Shown piece after piece: positions 1 to 5,679 of a DNA stretch of 5,679 nt. The stretch is from Selaginella moellendorffii (Eukaryota > Plantae > Lycopodiophyta). Both the position numbers and the translations under genes were made by a program. The DNA lies in the NCBI RefSeq assembly GCF_000143415.4, contig NW_003314718.1, positions 1 to 5,679 on the forward strand, written 5' to 3'. How positions within the stretch are numbered: position 1 is the stretch's first letter; each line of letters opens with the position of its first letter. Under the pieces are notes generated by a model. That model was not told where the DNA came from, did no database searches, and saw only the letters and a program-made list of their open reading frames with translations.

Positions 1-435
1 TATGAAGAATAATTACTGTTATCATAACATATTAATCTTGGTTGTTCTAACCAACTATATTAAACTTAAGATATTTTATTAAAAACTCATAAAAAGATAG
101 ATGTCAAAAGTATAAAGTAAGGATTTTTTTCTTGAGGAAACTGAATTTTGCAACATAAAACAATGAATATGTGATTATGTATGCATACATTATATATTTA
201 CACATGTGTGGAGTTTTTTTTAGTAATTTTGTTAGTTATACGTGTGAGTTCGAGGTGTACAGTTACAATGCCATATATTAATATTTGTGTAGTTAGTCAT
301 ATGATTGATTTTAATTTGGACATGAATGTCATTACCAACTAAGTTTGATTGATCAACTGCAACTATATAGCATCAAGCAATTACACAAATTGCACCAATT
401 GTTACTTTAGAATCAAATAAGGAGTTTCCCCTGCC

Positions 436-490
436 ATGAAAATGAAAGAAAAGAAAATAAAAAAGAAAAAAATAAAAATGAAATGAAATA
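436..490. repeat. A-rich low-complexity tract
   Basis: atgaaaatgaaagaaaagaaaataaaaaagaaaaaaataaaaatgaaatgaaata. Confidence 0.6.
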
Positions 491-942
491 GTTCATATTC
501 AGGAGCAAGTAAACACATGTAAATGTTTGTGTGTACTATAATAATAATATAATCCTTCTAAATGTAAATAAATTCTCAATTGATGATATCAAAACTCATT
601 ATTCTAAGTAATTTATGGCAATTGCAAAAAGCTTTACATACATTTCTAACATTTAAAGAACTTTATTAAAAAATAAATTACAAGATTTTATTAGTTTCAT
701 AATAGTGCAATTACTAGTATCTTTATGAGCAAAGGATAATAGTTGAAGACTGGAATTATCCAATTTTAAAGTCCATCGCATTATACAGGTGTACCAAAGC
801 ATCACCTGCTTAAAAATATAGAACTAGGTAGACAATATATGTACTAGATGTTTGACAATTGATATAGCTAAGATGTTTCGCTCACTCACCCATATTCTTC
901 CCCAGAAAATCATATCACATGTAATTACGTTTAAGTCCATCC

Positions 943-949
943 TATTTAA
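943..949 (+). promoter_or_regulatory. Candidate TATA box (TATTTAA) of the Hog gene
   Basis: cc-TATTTAA-g lies about 60-70 nt upstream of the ATG, a typical plant core-promoter position. Motif match only. Confidence 0.45.
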
Positions 950-1010
950 GCAGTGCATGGCCAATGATTCTTCATATGCTTAGTGTCTCCTTAAGTATAT
1001 TTGAAAGGCA

Positions 1011-1076
1011 ATGGCTTCTCTAGCTGCTGTGTTTGCTGTGGTCTCTCTTCTTGGATTGTTTTCCACCGTGTTTGCT
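1011..1076 (+). other. Predicted signal peptide (about 22 aa)
   Basis: MASLAAVFAVVSLLGLFSTVFA: uncharged hydrophobic core ending in V-F-A, which fits the -3/-1 small-residue rule. Judged by eye, not computed. Confidence 0.8.
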
Positions 1077-1979
1077 ACTAATATAGTGAGTTGCACTACT
1101 ACTGCTGATTGCACAACAGCGGGGCTAACTGGATTCACATGTAACAATGGAATATGTCAAAACCCTGGATGCTTTCCAGGTAATAAAGTTATTCTCTACA
1201 AATTACACTGTGCTATGTAACCATGCAATATCTATCTAGGTGATGCAATGGTTCATATGTACAGTGGAGAAATGAAGACCATGAAGGAACTTAAGATTGG
1301 AGATAAGGCAAGATCCTAGCTAGTAATCCACTTTGCTTCACATGATTAATGAGTTTCTACAGGTTGCTGTTGGGAAGAATTCATTTTCGGATATCTACGC
1401 GTTTGGTCACAAGGATCTAGATGTTGTCTCTGAATTCGTGCAAGTCAAGACCGAAGCCAACACCTTGGAGCTTACAGCCGGTCACTTTGTCCCCAGTAAC
1501 ACCAAAGGAGAGATAATTTAACAGCGAGCTGCTGATCTCAAAGTTGGCGATAGCCTGTCCACAATCTCTGGAGCCTCACCAATCACAGGTACAAGAAACC
1601 ACACCTCTTAATGCTCTGTAATAACACAATCTTGATATACGCAGAGATCTCAAAGGTTGACAAGCTGGGACTCTACAACCCCTTGACACTGTCGGGCAAC
1701 ATTCTTGTCAATAACGTGGTGGCCTCTGTTCACAGCGAATGGTTCTTAGATTCTCTGTTCGATGCCCTTGGTGCAAGCGAATACCTCCCATATGCATACC
1801 AGTCACTGCTCGCTCCAGTTCGTGCTCTTTACAACATCGCGGGAAGCAAGCTCTACTCGGCTGGCTACTCCATGCTCGATTCTTGCGTGAATGTGGCAGA
1901 CTCTGGCACCAAGTATGGAGGCCCCATTGCTATCACCATTGGTATTGGAGCTCTAGCCTTTGCCGCTCGCTCCATTTAG
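1011..1979 (+). CDS. Secreted Cys-rich-peptide / hedgehog-like Hog (Hint + SRR-like) precursor; exons 1011-1179, 1240-1307, 1363-1588, 1645-1979; one in-frame TAA at 1519-1521 (nonsense allele, young pseudogene, error or readthrough)
   Basis: Manual splicing gives 798 nt in a consistent frame: MASLAAVFAVVSLLGLFSTVFA-TNIVSCTTTADCTTAGLTGFTCNNGICQNPG|CFPGDAMVHMYSGEMKTMKELKIGDKVAVGKNSFSDIYAFGHKD...LELTAGHFVPSNTKGEII*QRAADLKVGDSL...ISKVDKLGLYNPLTLSGNILVNNVVASVHSEWFLD...LAPVRALY...PIAITIGIGALAFAARSI. The Hint motifs (GCF, L.IGD.V, TxxH, A.DL.VGD.L, G.Y.PLT..G...VN.V.AS) fall in order across the splice junctions. Confidence 0.9.
1077..1169 (+). other. 31-aa four-cysteine module (C-x5-C-x9-C-x4-C), the predicted released N-terminal product
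   Basis: TNIVSCTTTADCTTAGLTGFTCNNGICQNPG lies between the signal peptide and the Gly|Cys autocleavage site. Confidence 0.75.
1180..1239 (+). other. Intron 1 (60 nt, GT-AG, phase 1)
   Basis: CCAG|gtaata...tatctag|GTGAT. Splicing restores CFP-G-DA. Confidence 0.88.
1308..1362 (+). other. Intron 2 (55 nt, non-canonical GC-AG, phase 0)
   Basis: AAG|gcaaga...ttctacag|GTT. Splicing restores the Hint motif LKIGDK-V and removes an in-frame TAG. Confidence 0.85.
1589..1644 (+). other. Intron 3 (56 nt, GT-AG, phase 1)
   Basis: ACAG|gtacaa...tacgcag|AGATC. Joins ...SPIT-E-ISKV in the frame of ORF 1611-1979. Confidence 0.85.
1734..1850 (+). other. Sterol-recognition-region-like segment (makes the Hint a Hog domain)
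   Basis: AYQSLLAPVRALY (LAPVRALY at 1809-1832) resembles the hedgehog SRR helix motif (F/L)AP(L/M)RL, at a comparable position after the Hint. Confidence 0.7.
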
Positions 1980-2028
1980 AGCAGCCGCATTCTTACAAAG
2001 AAAGAATAATCAAGTGAATTATTTGCAC

Positions 2029-2822
2029 TTAATCATAGCTGGATGCGAATAGTACATAAGCCGCTGAATCAAACTCATCCAAATCCATCAAACGCTTGAA
2101 TGCCACCTTTCCCACCTCAAGATTCTTCCACCTTCTACAAGCATCTAGGATAATTCTCCACAACACCACCAACTTAACGTTGCTAACACTTTCCACCGAG
2201 CTAACCATGTCTACTGCGGCATTTAGTTCATTGGCTCTACCTAGAAGATCCACCAAGCGCACAAAATAATCCTGCGAAGGAATCACTTCTGCAAAGAGTT
2301 TCCTGGCGGCCTCTAGCTCGCCACCGTGGCTACAAGCAGTGATAACGCTAGCCAGAGTTTTAGCGTCCAGTCGAAACCCCTCCTCTTCCATTCCACAAAG
2401 AAGCTCCATCACAAGCTTGGAGCTTCCTTGACGGCCATAGCCTTCCACGAGAGCTGTCCAGGCCGCTAGCTCCTTGGCAAAGATCTTATCAAAAACCAGT
2501 CGAGCGTCCACCATGCTTCCACACTTGCAATAGAAGTCGACCAAACTAGTCCCAACGGTGAGAGATTCTTCCATCCCCATGCGGCAAGCTAGAGCATGAG
2601 TGGCTTTGCCCCGTCCCAGAGAGGCCAGGCTTCCACAAGCCTTGAGAGCAGCAGCCAAGCTGTGAGCATCCAAAACTCAAGGAGGAATCTCTCGAAAGAG
2701 CTCCAAGCCTAGTGCTGCTTGCTTGTTCTCGGCATAGCCCAGGACCATCGAGTTCCATGCTGCGACGTCGTCTCTCGGCATCGTGTCGAAAACTCGTCGA
2801 GCATCCCCCATGCTCCCACACT
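2029..2822 (-). pseudogene. PLS-class pentatricopeptide repeat (PPR) gene with partial E domain; 5'-truncated, in-frame TGA at 2679-2677
   Basis: ORFs 2677-2916 and 2029-2673 share a frame and are separated by one TGA: CGSMGDARRVFDTMPRDDVAAWNSMVLGYAEN...LELFREIPP*VLDAHSLAAALKACGSLASLGRGK..H...SLVDFYCKCGSMVDARLVFDKI...AWTALVEGYGRQG...VITACSHGG...LVDLLGRA...LWRIILDACR...AAYVLFASSY. PPR similarity stops at about 2822, where retrotransposon sequence begins. Confidence 0.92.
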
Positions 2823-3405
2823 CTGATCCCTTCGATAATCTTTGTGTTACAGCGGTTGACCGGCTCATGAAGGAGTATTTTGATCTCTTTGAATTTGATC
2901 TATCGCCTGGGGCCAAGATTGCTACACGTCATCCGATTCCAACCGGGGATGCTCGTCCAATCAAGGTTTTTATTCGTCGTTGGTCACCCAAAGAGATTAA
3001 GATTTTATGTGCAAATGTCAAGAAGATGTTGAAGAAGGGTGTTATTCGGAAGTTGCAAAGTCCTTGGGCATGTGAACCTCATCTTATGACGAAGCCTGAT
3101 GGGAGTATTCATTTCTACATTGACTATCATTCATTAAACAAAGTGATGAGCCAAGATGTGTACCCTCTTCCTCATATTGTTGATCTTTTAGATCGTCTGG
3201 GGCGAAGTCATTAGTTCACCAAACTAGATCTTACTTCTAGGTATTGGCAAGTACCGATGGCCAAAAAAGATATTTTTAAAACTACTTTTCATACACTATT
3301 TAGTTTGTATGAGTTTTTGGTGATGCCGTTTAGTTTAAACAATGCTCTAGCAACTTTCTAGCGGATGATGGACGAAGTTCTTTGCAATGAGCCCGAGTGT
3401 GCTTG
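2823..3405 (+). pseudogene. pol: Gypsy reverse transcriptase, N-terminal half (YxDD region deleted)
   Basis: HPIPTGDARPIK...VKKMLKKGVIR...SPWA...KPDGSIHFYIDYHSLNKV...YPLPHIVDLLDRL...[15 protein letters not shown]...KTTF...[25 protein letters not shown]. Confidence 0.93.
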
Positions 3406-3413
3406 ATCAGTGC

Positions 3414-3690
3414 CATCTCATTGCATATATAAACCGTATATTGCAATCAGTGGAGGTGAATTACAGAAGGAGTGTTTAGCAGCAGTCTAGGGTTTTGAGA
3501 AACTTCATGCATATTTACATGGTTTTCGGACGTTAGTTGAAGATGATTATGTTAATATTACTTCATTATTGAAACGAAAAAACTTGGTTGGTCGTACTAC
3601 TTGGTGGGCTTTGAAGCTTTAGATATATAATTTTGATGTTTTTCATCACCTAGGGAGTTTTATAGTTGATGCTGATGGCATTTCTCTAAC
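3414..3690 (+). pseudogene. pol: Gypsy RNase H, C-terminal part
   Basis: HLIAYINRILQSVEVNY / (frameshift near 3465) KECLAAV*GFEKLHAYLHG...GRTTWWALKL*IYNFDVFHHLG...DADGIS. Confidence 0.88.
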
Positions 3691-3930
3691 TCCTCTTCCT
3701 TCTGCACTCTCTTCTCATGTTTTTAACGAGTTTGTTGTTCTAGCATCTGTGGATTTTTTAGACGAGGATTCTGTGCCGTCGGCAGTTGCTGCACTTGATG
3801 TTCAGTGTCCACAAGGTGCATAGCAAAATCTACCCTCTTTTGATGAGGTTCGCAAAGGTCAAAAGATTGAGTCGTGGATTCAAAGGCTTCAAGATGGGTT
3901 TGAGAATCTTGCATCACTTGCTGATACCTT

Positions 3931-4680
3931 GAAGACAGCCTTCTTTATTTTGATGATCATTTACGGCTGATGGTGCCTTCTATCTTTATTCCATGGTTTC
4001 TCCATGGCTATCATGATTCTCCTCTTCTAGGTAGGTATATAGGGCATTGTAGTGTAACCAAGAAGCTACGCAGATCTTTCTATTGGCCGGAGATGCGACG
4101 TGATATTATCTAGTATGTGCGTAGCTGTGTTTGGTGCCAAGCTCGTAATACTCCCCCTCGTGCTATGGAAGGACGATTAGAGTCAATTGCAATTTCCCAT
4201 TCGTTTGAGTTGGTGGCATTTGATCTTATAGAACTTTTTCCATAGTCGACTGCTGGTAATGAGTATGTTATTATTGCTTCTGATTACTTGATTACTTGAC
4301 TTGTTGAGTGAAAGTTGGTGCTCTTGTTAGTGCCTCTGCAACTTTTGTTAGATACTTCCTCCTCAATCGAACAGTGTTCTAGCATTCTCGTTCATAGTGG
4401 ATTCTTTCGAACACTTAAGTCATGTATAAATGTGACAACAATGGCGCTACAACTCCCATCATCGTTCACTTGCGGAGTACAAAGTGGATGACTTAGTGTT
4501 AGTCCATTTTCCCCATTTTAAGGTACGTGGTTTATCTAAGGGGTTTATTGCTCAATGGAAAGGACCGTATTAGGTGTTGTGGCAAGTTGGACCACAAGTT
4601 TATGAAGTTTGCAATAATGTTTAGCAGAATGATCTTCTAGATATTGTGCATGTGTAGTGGTTAAAATGCTTCATACAAAG
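3931..4680 (+). pseudogene. pol: Gypsy integrase remnant (HHCC zinc finger, partial core, GPY/F module; no chromodomain seen)
   Basis: LLYF...RLMVP...YHDSPL...FYWPEMRRDII*YVRSCVWCQ...FELVAFDLIELFP*STAGNEYVIIASDYL...FLLNRTVF*H...ILSN / deletion / RYN...EYKVDDLVLV...WKGPY*V...VYEV...IVHV*WLK. Confidence 0.9.
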
Positions 4681-4788
4681 GGATCAGAAGCAATTAATAC
4701 CACTTACAGATCTGCCAATGCCTCCTCCTAACGTTCTTCCAGATCCCGGCCCATCTACAAAAGAACCTTGATGGTGTTCCATTATTCT

Positions 4789-4800
4789 GAAAGGAGGGAA
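4789..4800 (+). other. Polypurine tract (PPT)
   Basis: GAAAGGAGGGAA: 12 consecutive purines downstream of integrase, directly followed by TGATGTG. Confidence 0.75.
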
Positions 4801-4937
4801 TGATGTGAAGGCCAAGTGTATGGCTATGATGCCATATACTAATATTAGTATAGTGGGATTTTGGTAGCCGTCGGATTGGTTTCAATCCGGACCACTCGCT
4901 CCTGTATATAAGCTAGGGTAATTGATATACACAATCA
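4801..4937 (+). repeat. Putative 3' LTR (start 4801 or 4804; end uncertain, possibly truncated)
   Basis: Begins with TG after the PPT and contains TATATAAG (4905-4912). An imperfect inverted terminus CACAATCA lies at 4930-4937, after which the sequence becomes very AT-rich. No 5' LTR is available for comparison. Confidence 0.5.
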
Positions 4938-5679
4938 AAGCTCTAAAATAATGAAATTTATAAATAATCATTAGTTACAAAATAACTAACAATCACTCTT
5001 AAATTTGTTGTCATAAGGCTCAAACACTAAATTTACATCATTGAGTTATATATTTGTCCAACATAAAAGTAACACTCTAAATACAACATATAGAAACATA
5101 AATAATTACAGACAAAATGACTACTTAAATCCAATCATACAACAATAACCCTACTAACATCTTTAACAAATAACTCTAAGTACAAATGAAGAGGTTAGCC
5201 ACAAATGATTAACATTTAGTTGAAACTAAAGGGAAGACTATGAGATGGATTTATATACCTAAAACTGTTATTACTTTAACTGCAAACAACTAAGCTAAAT
5301 ATCACTATCTTAAACTAAGTCAAGTTTAATTAGAGTTAACTACTCTCATTAAATTTAACTAAATATAAGATGTAATCTACCAACAAATATAATGTTACAT
5401 AAGAAAAGCCTAAGGGAAAAAAACAACAACCACTTTTTTACTTTAATTTTAGTCAACTTTAACCCTTTCACTAAATGGCTTTCAAAAATGAAATGGTTTT
5501 TGGGCAAAATAATCAACAAATCAACCATTAAGAAAATTTGTGGAAAATTTTCTTTACTACAAAAAGAATAACTTTTAATCCAAGAATGTAAATTTTTAAT
5601 ACTCAACCAACTTCCTCTTATTTACAATTTCATATATATTCATTTCTACATCAATTTTTATGACTCAACAATATGCCTA

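What the first reader, a model, noticed from the sequence alone, without database searches (positions are those of the whole stretch)
1011..1979. Plant hedgehog-like system: a self-cleaving precursor predicted to release a sterol-tagged 31-aa Cys-rich peptide
Seen: the spliced gene reads signal peptide, 4-Cys mini-domain, G|CF Hint, SRR-like helix, hydrophobic tail. Established: in animal Hedgehog the Hog domain cleaves at Gly|Cys through a thioester and transfers cholesterol to the new C-terminus of the upstream domain. Hog-domain genes have been reported in some non-seed plants and protists, but to my knowledge their plant cargo and function are uncharacterised. Inference: the cargo here is not a Hedge domain but a tiny disulfide-bonded peptide (TNIVSC...CQNPG). 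This would be a route to a lipid-anchored signalling or defence peptide in a land plant. ORF-based annotation misses it because of three introns, a GC donor and an internal stop.
Basis: partly seen in the sequence, partly recalled or inferred. Interest (0 to 1): 0.9.

Follow-up and report, generated by a model that had tools for sequence, protein, structure and literature searches.

The report
Stop-bearing copy of known spikemoss Hog gene
This is one more copy of an already annotated and published spikemoss (Selaginella) gene family that joins a small secreted four-cysteine peptide to a Hedgehog-type self-cleaving domain. This copy carries a stop codon that its near-identical, expressed sister genes lack, and whether any of them attaches a sterol is still untested.

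Summary
Window 1011-1979 (+) is a four-exon gene with introns of 60, 55 and 56 nt, the second using a GC donor. It encodes a signal peptide, a 31-aa 4-Cys peptide, G53|C54-F, a Hint module, a conserved helical region and a C-terminal hydrophobic helix. An in-frame TAA sits at 1519-1521.

RNA-derived contigs from three studies show all three junctions. Pfam Hint, PDB sequence searches and Foldseek (Drosophila Hh-C, TM 0.86) confirm a Hedgehog-type Hint.

It is not hidden or new:
- The window is a whole 5,679-bp orphan scaffold of Selaginella moellendorffii.
- An intact twin, XP_024537580.1 ("warthog protein 6"), differs at three residues and lies in a tandem Hog array.
- Bürglin (2008) described moss and Selaginella Hog genes with a signal peptide and a conserved upstream region.
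- This scan has flagged the same family elsewhere in this genome.

The TAA is private to this scaffold. Five other copies and all four laid runs read TAC. It is either a base-call error or a private null allele.

Sterol tagging remains inference. C1 and TxxH are present, His replaces the Asp46 base, and Cys143, required in animal Hedgehog, is Val.

The parts
1011..1979 (+). Hog gene copy, ATG to TAG. Four exons, 265 codons, one in-frame stop.
1011..1179 (+). Exon 1. Signal peptide is codons 1-22 (1011-1076). The 31-aa 4-Cys cargo T23-G53 is 1077-1169. Gly53 is 1167-1169. The catalytic Cys54 codon TGC is 1170-1172.
   Evidence: Spliced contigs. Weak Nodulin_late hit, below Pfam's cut-off.
1180..1239 (+). 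Intron 1, 60 nt, GT-AG
   Evidence: Joint 1177/1238 (cut +2) in the X2 contig
1240..1307 (+). Exon 2 (Hint profile positions 17-38)
1308..1362 (+). Intron 2, 55 nt, GC-AG. The GC donor is conserved in all five other copies.
   Evidence: Joint 1305/1361 with 3 ambiguous letters in X1, X2 and X11. Copy alignment.
1363..1588 (+). Exon 3. His95 (1408-1410) aligns with Hedgehog Asp46. Thr117 (1474-1476) and His120 (1483-1485) form the TxxH motif.
1494..1496 (+). Scaffold-private trinucleotide CAG where all other copies and all laid runs have AGT (Ser124 here, Val elsewhere)
1519..1521 (+). In-frame TAA (codon 132). With 1522 it reads TAA CAG, where all other copies and all laid runs read TAC AAG (Tyr-Lys, the family motif YKRA). 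It lies 67 nt upstream of the last exon junction.
1589..1644 (+). Intron 3, 56 nt, GT-AG
   Evidence: Joint 1585/1642 (cut +3) in X1, X2 and X11
1645..1979 (+). Exon 4. The Hint module ends near residue 185. Val183 (1728-1730) aligns with Hedgehog Cys143. The conserved helical region, residues 186-236, is 1737-1889. The C-terminal hydrophobic helix, about residues 246-262, is about 1917-1967. TAG is 1977-1979.

Best explanation
**What the window is.** It is an unplaced 5.7-kb scaffold of the Selaginella moellendorffii v1 assembly. It carries one more copy of a tandemly repeated, already annotated Hog gene, named 'warthog protein 4/6' or 'Hint domain-containing protein'.

**What the gene encodes.**
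- a signal peptide
- a 31-residue peptide with four cysteines
- a Hedgehog-type Hint module that starts at Cys54, just after Gly53
- a strongly conserved helical region
- a C-terminal membrane helix

**Status of the copies.** Sister copies that are about 99% identical are intact, transcribed and spliced exactly as modelled. This copy alone has a TAA in place of a conserved Tyr codon. The TAA is either a base-call error in a leftover scaffold or a private null allele. I could not decide which.

**Most likely mechanism for the intact genes (inferred, not shown).**
1. The precursor enters the ER and is held at the membrane by its C-terminal helix.
2. Cys54, helped by Thr117 and His120, converts the Gly53-Cys54 peptide bond into a thioester.
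3. A nucleophile positioned by His95 and the conserved C-terminal region resolves the thioester and frees the disulfide-bonded peptide.
4. Whether that nucleophile is a sterol, as in animal Hedgehog, or water is open.

**What the confidence covers.** The figure given is for the identity claim: a known, annotated Hog family member on an orphan scaffold, with a scaffold-private stop. I rate autocleavage at Gly53|Cys54 at about 0.65 and sterol transfer at about 0.25.
For: **Identity**
- P0158 and P0171 both sit on a contig of 5,679 bp, the window's length, in S. moellendorffii. P0171 equals model residues 1-131.
- P0151 (XP_024537580.1, 265 aa) differs from the model only at S124V, stop132Y and Q133K.

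**Tandem array**
- On GL377597.1 the order is Hog - PPR fragment - retroelement - Hog - Hog - PPR.
- The window is 98.2% identical to the first unit over 5.1 kb, and its gene is 99.3% identical to the third copy.

**Expression and splicing**
- Spliced contigs in X1, X2 and X11, from three studies, show the three junctions.

**Hint membership**
- Pfam PF01079 scores 93.3 bits on the twin and 58.5 bits on the window-encoded P0171, against a cut-off of 29.7.
- PDB sequence hits are 6TYY, 1AT0, 6TD6 and 7E2I. The family profile reaches E 1e-31.
- The AlphaFold2 model has pLDDT 85.3. Its best Foldseek matches are 6TYY and 1AT0, with TM 0.86 and rmsd 2.1 A.

**Catalytic residues across 128 relatives**
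- Cys54: 67 of 69
- His95: 90 of 97
- Thr/Ser117: 97 of 100
- His120: 98 of 103

**The stop is private to this scaffold**
- Five other copies read TAC AAG, and so do all four laid runs.
- No run was listed for the 31-mers spanning it.

**Prior description**
- Buerglin 2008, PMC2362128.
Against: - Autocleavage itself is not shown for any plant Hog.
- In animal Hedgehog, Cys143 is reported as required for autoprocessing and for DTT-induced cleavage (PMC12054796). Here the aligned residue is Val183, and across the family it varies among Ala, Ser, Val, Cys and Thr.
- The C-terminal 80 residues show no detectable sequence similarity to the animal sterol-recognition region. Pfam and the profile alignments stop at residue 184-186 even against full-length Hedgehog chains.
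- Paralogues with cargos of only 4-5 residues argue that the released peptide may not be the point of the system.
- The window could not be placed. It looks like a mosaic of two array units.
- None of its private bases at 937, 1067, 1494-1496, 1521-1522, 2177, 2256, 2263, 2369 and 2668 was seen in the four runs laid.
Confidence: 0.85

Rival explanations
1. The TAA and the neighbouring odd trinucleotide are base-call or assembly errors in a low-coverage leftover scaffold. The real locus is an intact Hog copy identical in protein to XP_024537580.1.
For: - Both changes look like compensated one-base shifts 25 nt apart: CCCCAGTAAC against CCCAGTTAAC, and TAACAG against TACAAG.
- They are private to the window against five other copies.
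- All four laid runs, including DNA run X7 at high word depth, read the other version with no contig carrying the window's letters.
- No run was listed for the 31-mers across them.
- Several further dinucleotide differences of the same shift-like kind occur in the window's non-coding flank.
- The scaffold is a 5.7-kb orphan that looks like a mosaic of two array units.
Against: - Most of the window's other private differences are plain transitions at a density similar to the private differences of the annotated copy HogC. That looks like real divergence.
- Contigs drop rare variants, and the run search sampled only 5 words.
Confidence: 0.5
2. The TAA is real. This is a recently disabled copy, or a null allele on the second haplotype, in a redundant tandem array. 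It would make a 131-residue product without the second half of the Hint fold, and its mRNA is a likely target of nonsense-mediated decay.
For: - The window has its own scatter of private substitutions, as expected of a separate copy or haplotype.
- The array has at least four intact near-identical siblings, so loss of one is cheap.
- A clearly decayed paralogue with several frameshifts exists on GL377654.1, so pseudogenisation does happen in this family.
- The stop lies 67 nt upstream of the last exon junction, which would explain the absence of window-type RNA contigs.
- RefSeq accepted the stop and annotated a 131-aa product.
Against: No independent read evidence for the TAA in any run laid or listed. 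The shift-like form of both private changes is unusual for point mutation.
Confidence: 0.45
3. One reading: the intact family members transfer a plant sterol to Gly53 and release a sterol-anchored 4-Cys signalling or defence peptide.
For: - The fold and sequence are closest to Hedgehog Hh-C among solved structures.
- Cys1 and TxxH are conserved.
- The residue at the Asp46 general-base position is His. The engineered D46H Hedgehog still autoprocesses (PMC12054796; PDB 6TYY is that mutant and is the best match).
- A very conserved helical region sits where the sterol-recognition region sits.
- The membrane helix would hold the reaction at a sterol-containing membrane.
- One relative carries a hevein chitin-binding domain as cargo, which fits a defence role.
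Against: - There is no Cys at the Cys143 position, although that residue is reported as essential in animals.
- No detectable sequence similarity to the animal SRR.
- No adduct has been reported for any non-animal Hog in the library searched.
- Cargos of 4-5 residues in paralogues are hard to read as signalling peptides.
Confidence: 0.25
4. The Hint module only cuts itself off by hydrolysis, or the conserved, functional product is the membrane-anchored Hog part itself. The N-terminal peptide would then be a variable leader of little importance.
For: - The Hog part, and above all residues 182-214, is far better conserved than the cargo: S182, H184, S185, W187, D190, P203, Y206, Q207, P212 and R214 are each at 90% or more.
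- The cargo ranges from 4 residues to more than 200 and has no detectable relatives outside its own cluster.
- Cys143 is absent.
Against: - All four Cys are kept in every intact copy of this subfamily and in the more distant P0004 cargo.
- Recognisable domains such as hevein occur as cargo.
Confidence: 0.3

Closest known systems
Plant Hog proteins of Physcomitrella and Selaginella (pPp, pSl, pSm Hog; Buerglin 2008, BMC Genomics 9:127, PMC2362128), annotated in S. moellendorffii as 'warthog protein 4/6', 'indian hedgehog B protein' or 'Hint domain-containing protein'
   Same: Same species and same family. The layout is a signal peptide, a short conserved upstream region and a Hog domain whose motif-J cysteine is replaced. 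The window's gene is itself annotated as EFJ04280.1 and XP_024523917.1, and its twin is XP_024537580.1.
   Different: This copy has an in-frame TAA at codon 132 and sits on an unplaced scaffold. The RefSeq names come from automated similarity through the Hog domain and do not imply a nematode Wart domain or a Hedge domain.
Animal Hedgehog C-terminal autoprocessing domain (Hh-C; PDB 1AT0, 6TYY)
   Same: Hint fold with TM 0.86 and rmsd 2.1 A. Gly|Cys-Phe junction, Cys1 nucleophile and TxxH motif. A helical region follows the Hint module.
   Different: - His replaces the Asp46 general base.
- Val replaces Cys143.
- The C-terminal region is not detectably similar in sequence to the SRR.
- There is an extra C-terminal membrane helix.
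- The cargo is a 31-aa peptide rather than a Hedge domain.
- Sterol transfer is unknown.
Nematode Hog proteins (Warthog, Groundhog, Quahog)
   Same: A Hog domain fused to varied, non-Hedge, secreted, Cys-containing N-terminal parts; a multigene family.
   Different: The N-terminal domains are unrelated and no Wart-type domain is present. Similarity is limited to the Hint module, on which the RefSeq name rests.
Legume nodule-specific Cys-rich (NCR, Pfam Nodulin_late) peptides
   Same: A signal peptide followed by a short 4-Cys peptide. Weak Pfam hits of 23.6 and 18.9 bits.
   Different: The hits are below the 30.4-bit cut-off, and much of the score comes from the signal peptide. NCRs are not fused to a Hint domain. 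This is a pattern resemblance only.

Membership tests
Hedgehog-type Hint / Hog domain (Pfam PF01079) | Hint-module HMM score above the curated cut-off | tested here: met
   P0171, encoded by the window as it stands, scores 58.5 bits. The twin P0151 scores 93.3 bits. The cut-off is 29.7. The three exon pieces hit the profile in order.
Hedgehog-type Hint / Hog domain (Pfam PF01079) | Hint fold, closest to Hh-C rather than to inteins | tested here: met
   AlphaFold2 model of the twin, pLDDT 85.3. Foldseek ranks 6TYY and 1AT0 first at E 3e-13 and TM 0.86. Inteins and BIL domains follow at E 7e-9 and weaker.
Hedgehog-type Hint / Hog domain (Pfam PF01079) | Gly|Cys-Phe junction with the Cys1 nucleophile | tested here: met
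   G53-C54-F55-P56-G57. Cys in 67 of 69 relatives.
Hedgehog-type Hint / Hog domain (Pfam PF01079) | TxxH motif (Hh-C T69, H72) | tested here: met
   T117-A-G-H120 aligns with T69-P-A-H72. Thr/Ser in 97 of 100 and His in 98 of 103 relatives.
Hedgehog-type Hint / Hog domain (Pfam PF01079) | Asp46 general base that activates the sterol hydroxyl | tested here: not met
   His95 aligns with position 46, and His is found in 90 of 97 relatives. The engineered D46H Hedgehog still autoprocesses (PMC12054796), so function may be kept.
Hedgehog-type Hint / Hog domain (Pfam PF01079) | Cys143, site of the branched thioester intermediate and required in animal Hedgehog | tested here: not met
   Val183 aligns with Cys143. 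Across the family the position holds Ala 38, Ser 30, Val 28, Cys 18 and Thr 12.
Hedgehog-type Hint / Hog domain (Pfam PF01079) | Sterol-recognition region after the Hint module | tested here: inconclusive
   A helical, highly conserved region is present at residues 186-236. The Pfam match stops at profile position 162 of 213, and profile alignments to full-length Hedgehog chains stop at residue 184. Buerglin reports that moss Hogs have his motif K.
Hedgehog-type Hint / Hog domain (Pfam PF01079) | Autocleavage with transfer of a sterol to the new C-terminus | not testable with these tools
   This needs biochemistry. No report for plant Hogs was found.
Hedgehog-type Hint / Hog domain (Pfam PF01079) | Uninterrupted reading frame | tested here: not met
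   TAA at 1519-1521 in the window. The frame is open in the copies on GL377597.1 and GL377610.1.
Hedgehog proper (Hedge + Hog) | N-terminal Hedge signalling domain | tested here: not met
   Only 31 residues lie between the signal peptide and Cys54. No Hedge-domain family appears in the Pfam scan.
NCR / Nodulin_late peptides (PF07127) | HMM score above the curated cut-off | tested here: not met
   23.6, 18.9 and 16.4 bits against a cut-off of 30.4.

The most novel reading that the evidence does not exclude
Non-seed land plants (lycophytes, mosses, liverworts, ferns) use a Hog domain with a natural His general base and no Cys143 to esterify a membrane sterol onto small secreted peptides. These include this 4-Cys peptide and, in a relative, a hevein chitin-binding domain. 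That would give plants a sterol-anchored peptide class made by a Cys143-independent variant of the Hedgehog reaction.
Probability: 0.25. Interest if true: 0.8.

Novelty: already known. Interest (0 to 1): 0.25.

Why it matters
As a finding it adds little. The gene is annotated, its family was published in 2008, and this scan has met the same family on other scaffolds of this genome.

The useful results here are:
1. The stop codon is peculiar to a leftover scaffold. A natural intact twin exists, so no repaired construct is needed for experiments.
2. The splice model, including the GC donor, is confirmed by transcripts.
3. The plant family keeps Cys1 and TxxH, but carries His where animals have the Asp46 base and has no fixed residue where animals need Cys143.

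Whether a Hog domain outside animals attaches any lipid is still open. XP_024537580.1 is a compact, naturally intact test case for that question.

Tried and rejected
- **Cargo relatives.** A word-index search restricted to residues 18-60 found only the protein's own cluster. The ESM Atlas feature search gave a best score of 0.77, within noise. The Pfam Nodulin_late and EB hits are below cut-off. No family could be assigned to the peptide.
- **Placing the window.**
  - Window 22-575 matches only the spacer upstream of the third array copy.
  - The gene is closest to that same copy.
  - Window 2822-5679 matches the unit after the first copy.
  - Window 3908-5679 is 99.7% identical to the stretch upstream of the first copy.
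  - On the second-haplotype scaffold GL377610.1, window-like 1-443 is joined directly to window-like 2390-2822.
  - I could not decide between a further real copy, the missing second-haplotype piece and a chimeric scaffold.
- **Independent reads for the TAA.** None was listed (only 5 sampled words). The four runs laid do not show it. This does not prove absence.
- **GenBank's alternative model.** P0158 (180 aa) splices around the cargo and the stop. No contig supports its junctions, so I rejected it.
- **Homology of the C-terminal region to the animal SRR.** Not detected.
- **Literature on the function of plant Hog proteins.** Nothing beyond Buerglin 2008 was found in the library searched.
- **Structure.** I did not fold the window's own product read through the stop. 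I used the natural twin P0151 instead, which differs at 3 residues.
Full report
**1. The observation**

Reading the window and joining exons 1011-1179, 1240-1307, 1363-1588 and 1645-1979 gives a 798-nt coding sequence of 265 codons. It has one internal TAA at 1519-1521 (codon 132) and a terminal TAG. The introns are 60, 55 and 56 nt, with GT-AG, GC-AG and GT-AG ends.

The product reads: signal peptide (h-region, then VFA|T), the 31-residue peptide T23-G53 with Cys at 28, 34, 44 and 50, then G53|C54-F-P-G-D and a Hint-like body. A hydrophobic C-terminus follows; the only strongly hydrophobic 19-residue windows are 1-29 and 247-265.

Translated separately, exons 2, 3 and 4 each hit Pfam Hint PF01079 at successive profile positions: 17-38, 46-88 and 132-165, at 17.7, 19.3 and 29.3 bits.

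**2. Transcript evidence**

Twenty public runs from ten studies hold about half of the sampled words of window 900-2100. I laid four of them: X1, X2 and X11, guessed to be RNA, and X7, guessed to be DNA.

The contigs of X1, X2 and X11 skip exactly 1180-1239, 1308-1362 and 1589-1644. For intron 2 the joint can slide by three letters, and only the GC-AG placement is splice-site-like. The DNA-like run X7 shows no such joints. The gene model, GC donor included, is therefore confirmed by spliced transcripts in three studies.

These contigs are not the window's own sequence, however. All four runs read AGT at 1494-1496 where the window has CAG, and CA at 1521-1522 where it has AC. That turns TAA CAG into TAC AAG (Tyr-Lys).

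**3. What the window is**

A protein search returned S. moellendorffii proteins. Two of them lie on a contig of 5,679 bp, which is the window's length:
- EFJ04280.1 / SELMODRAFT_432559 (P0158, 180 aa).
- RefSeq XP_024523917.1 "warthog protein 4" (P0171, 131 aa).

P0158 is an ab initio model that splices around the cargo and the stop. No contig supports it.

XP_024537580.1 "warthog protein 6" (P0151, 265 aa) differs from the model only at S124V, stop132Y and Q133K.

On scaffold GL377597.1, P0151 is the third of three tandem Hog genes. The order is: Hog (P0165) - PPR fragment - retroelement - Hog (P0170) - Hog (P0151) - full PPR gene. The syntenic second-haplotype scaffold GL377610.1 carries one such gene (P0168).

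How the window compares with these:
- It is 98.2% identical over 5.1 kb to the first unit.
- Its gene is 99.3% identical (7 of 969 nt differ) to the third copy.
- Its first 550 nt match only the spacer in front of the third copy.

It cannot be placed, and may be a further copy, an unassembled second-haplotype piece or a chimera.

**4. The stop codon**

In a five-way alignment, the CAG at 1494-1496 and the AC at 1521-1522 are private to the window. The three copies on GL377597.1, the copy on GL377610.1 and even the decayed paralogue on GL377654.1 all read AGT and CA.

Both changes have the form of a one-base shift that is compensated a few bases later. A run search with the 87 nt spanning both sites listed no holder, though only five words were sampled.

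Against a pure error reading, the window also has about a dozen private single substitutions, mostly transitions, at a density like that of the annotated first copy.

If the TAA is real, it lies 67 nt upstream of the last exon junction. The mRNA would then be a likely target of nonsense-mediated decay (established rule; inference here). The 131-residue product would lack half of the Hint fold.

I put the two readings near even. Either way the stop is a property of this scaffold, not of the gene family.

**5. Family membership**

- The twin scores 93.3 bits on Pfam Hint, against a cut-off of 29.7.
- It matches Drosophila and human Hedgehog chains in the PDB by sequence.
- A profile of 128 relatives reaches E 1e-31 on 6TYY and 6TD6.
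- An AlphaFold2 model built on that alignment has mean pLDDT 85.3 and pTM 0.79, with the Hint core and residues 186-236 above 90.
- Foldseek ranks 6TYY and 1AT0 first (E 3e-13, TM 0.86 on the target, rmsd 2.1 A), ahead of BIL domains and inteins.

**6. Active site**

| Selaginella residue | Hh-C position | State across relatives |
|---|---|---|
| C54 | C1 | Cys in 67 of 69 |
| H95 | D46 | His in 90 of 97 |
| T117 | T69 | Thr or Ser in 97 of 100 |
| H120 | H72 | His in 98 of 103 |
| V183 | C143 | Ala 38, Ser 30, Val 28, Cys 18, Thr 12 |

The residue mapping comes from the alignment to Hh-C.

Faris et al. 2025 (PMC12054796) name C1, D46, T69, H72 and C143 as the Hh-C active site. They report that D46H still autoprocesses. 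They also report that C143A and C143D abolish autoprocessing and thiol-induced cleavage, because C143 carries a branched thioester.

The plant family therefore keeps the thioester-forming half of the site. It has a natural "D46H", and it cannot use a C143 intermediate in this protein.

The most conserved block of the whole family lies right after this point: S182, H184, S185, W187, D190, P203, Y206, Q207, P212 and R214 are each at 90% or more. It is helical in the model.

This block occupies the place of the sterol-recognition region. No sequence similarity to that region was detected: the Pfam match ends at profile position 162 of 213, and alignments to full-length Hedgehog chains end at residue 184.

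**7. Cargo**

Within S. moellendorffii the cargo varies while the Hog parts stay 55-66% identical. The forms seen are:
- 4-5 residues (TNTTG, TNTNNS).
- A Pro-rich stretch.
- A 4-Cys peptide, in this subfamily and in P0004.
- A domain of about 215 residues.

The four Cys are kept in all intact copies of this subfamily. No relatives of the peptide were found outside its own cluster. The Nodulin_late hit is below cut-off.

Relatives of the Hog part occur in Ceratodon purpureus, Marchantia paleacea and Adiantum capillus-veneris. One transcript-derived relative of unknown species carries a hevein chitin-binding domain above Pfam's cut-off as cargo.

**8. Comparison with what is known**

Buerglin 2008 (PMC2362128) reported Hog genes in Physcomitrella patens, Selaginella lepidophylla and S. 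moellendorffii. The paper noted a good signal peptide, an upstream region conserved among them, motifs J and K, and replacement of the motif-J cysteine.

I found no later functional work on plant Hog proteins in the searchable library.

Earlier notes of this scan had flagged the same family on other pieces of this genome, and two follow-ups reached the same reading. I checked the species and the 2008 paper independently.

**9. Verdict**

The reading as a Hedgehog-type autoprocessing precursor with a tiny Cys-rich cargo is supported at the level of sequence, fold and splicing.

Three points lower the interest: the gene is already annotated and the family is published, this copy's stop is scaffold-specific, and sterol tagging remains an inference. 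That inference now has a specific objection, the missing Cys143, and a specific point in its favour, the natural His at position 46.

Noticed in passing
window 2029-2916 (-): Fragment of a PLS-type PPR gene (PPR repeats and the start of an E motif), broken by a stop or frame change near 2674-2677 and cut off near 2822. The intact 848-aa relative follows the third Hog copy on GL377597.1. The array unit was evidently duplicated together with the 3' part of the PPR gene.
   Followed up: partly
window about 2830-4800 (+): A decayed LTR-retrotransposon remnant with many stops. One ORF (3970-4113) hits the integrase H2C2 zinc-binding domain at 27.5 bits. The same insertion lies after the first Hog copy on GL377597.1.
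   Followed up: partly
window 1-575 and 2822-5679; L002, L004, L005: The window is a mosaic. Its 5' end matches only the spacer before the third array copy, and its 3' part matches the unit after the first copy. Window 3908-5679 is 99.7% identical to the stretch upstream of the first copy. On the second-haplotype scaffold GL377610.1, window-like 1-443 is joined directly to window-like 2390-2822, next to an N gap. The window may therefore be a piece missing from that scaffold.
   Followed up: partly
L002:8022-8990 (GL377597.1, second Hog copy): RefSeq gives this copy a 206-aa product starting at Met60 (P0170). The DNA upstream, however, has an intact ATG, signal peptide and 4-Cys cargo with an extra Asn codon (CQNNTG|CF). 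The annotated model looks truncated at its 5' end.
   Followed up: partly
L003:9756-11064 (GL377654.1): A 90%-identical paralogue with a 10-nt deletion in the cargo, a 9-nt deletion and a 1-nt deletion in the last exon. This is a true decayed copy. It is annotated as a 165-aa protein (P0005) that starts in the wrong frame and skips exon 2.
   Followed up: partly
P0020 (309 aa, transcript-derived contig, species unknown): A relative in which the cargo is a hevein-type chitin-binding domain (Pfam Chitin_bind_1, 36.4 bits, above cut-off), joined directly to C-F-P-G of the Hog domain. This relative has Cys at the Cys143 position.
   Followed up: no
alignment A1, columns of P0151 residues 95 and 182-214: Across 128 plant and algal-type relatives, the position of the Hedgehog Asp46 base is His in 90 of 97. 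The block AS-x-HS-x-WF-x-D ... LP-x-x-YQ ... P-x-R after the Hint module is more conserved than the Hint core itself. His184-Ser185 might stand in for the missing Cys143; this was not tested.
   Followed up: partly
window 1160 and 1091-1116; X1 and X7 contigs: At least two cargo variants are transcribed in run X1: the CQNPG type and the CQNNTG type with the extra AAC codon. The latter type has two N-x-T sequons in the cargo.
   Followed up: no
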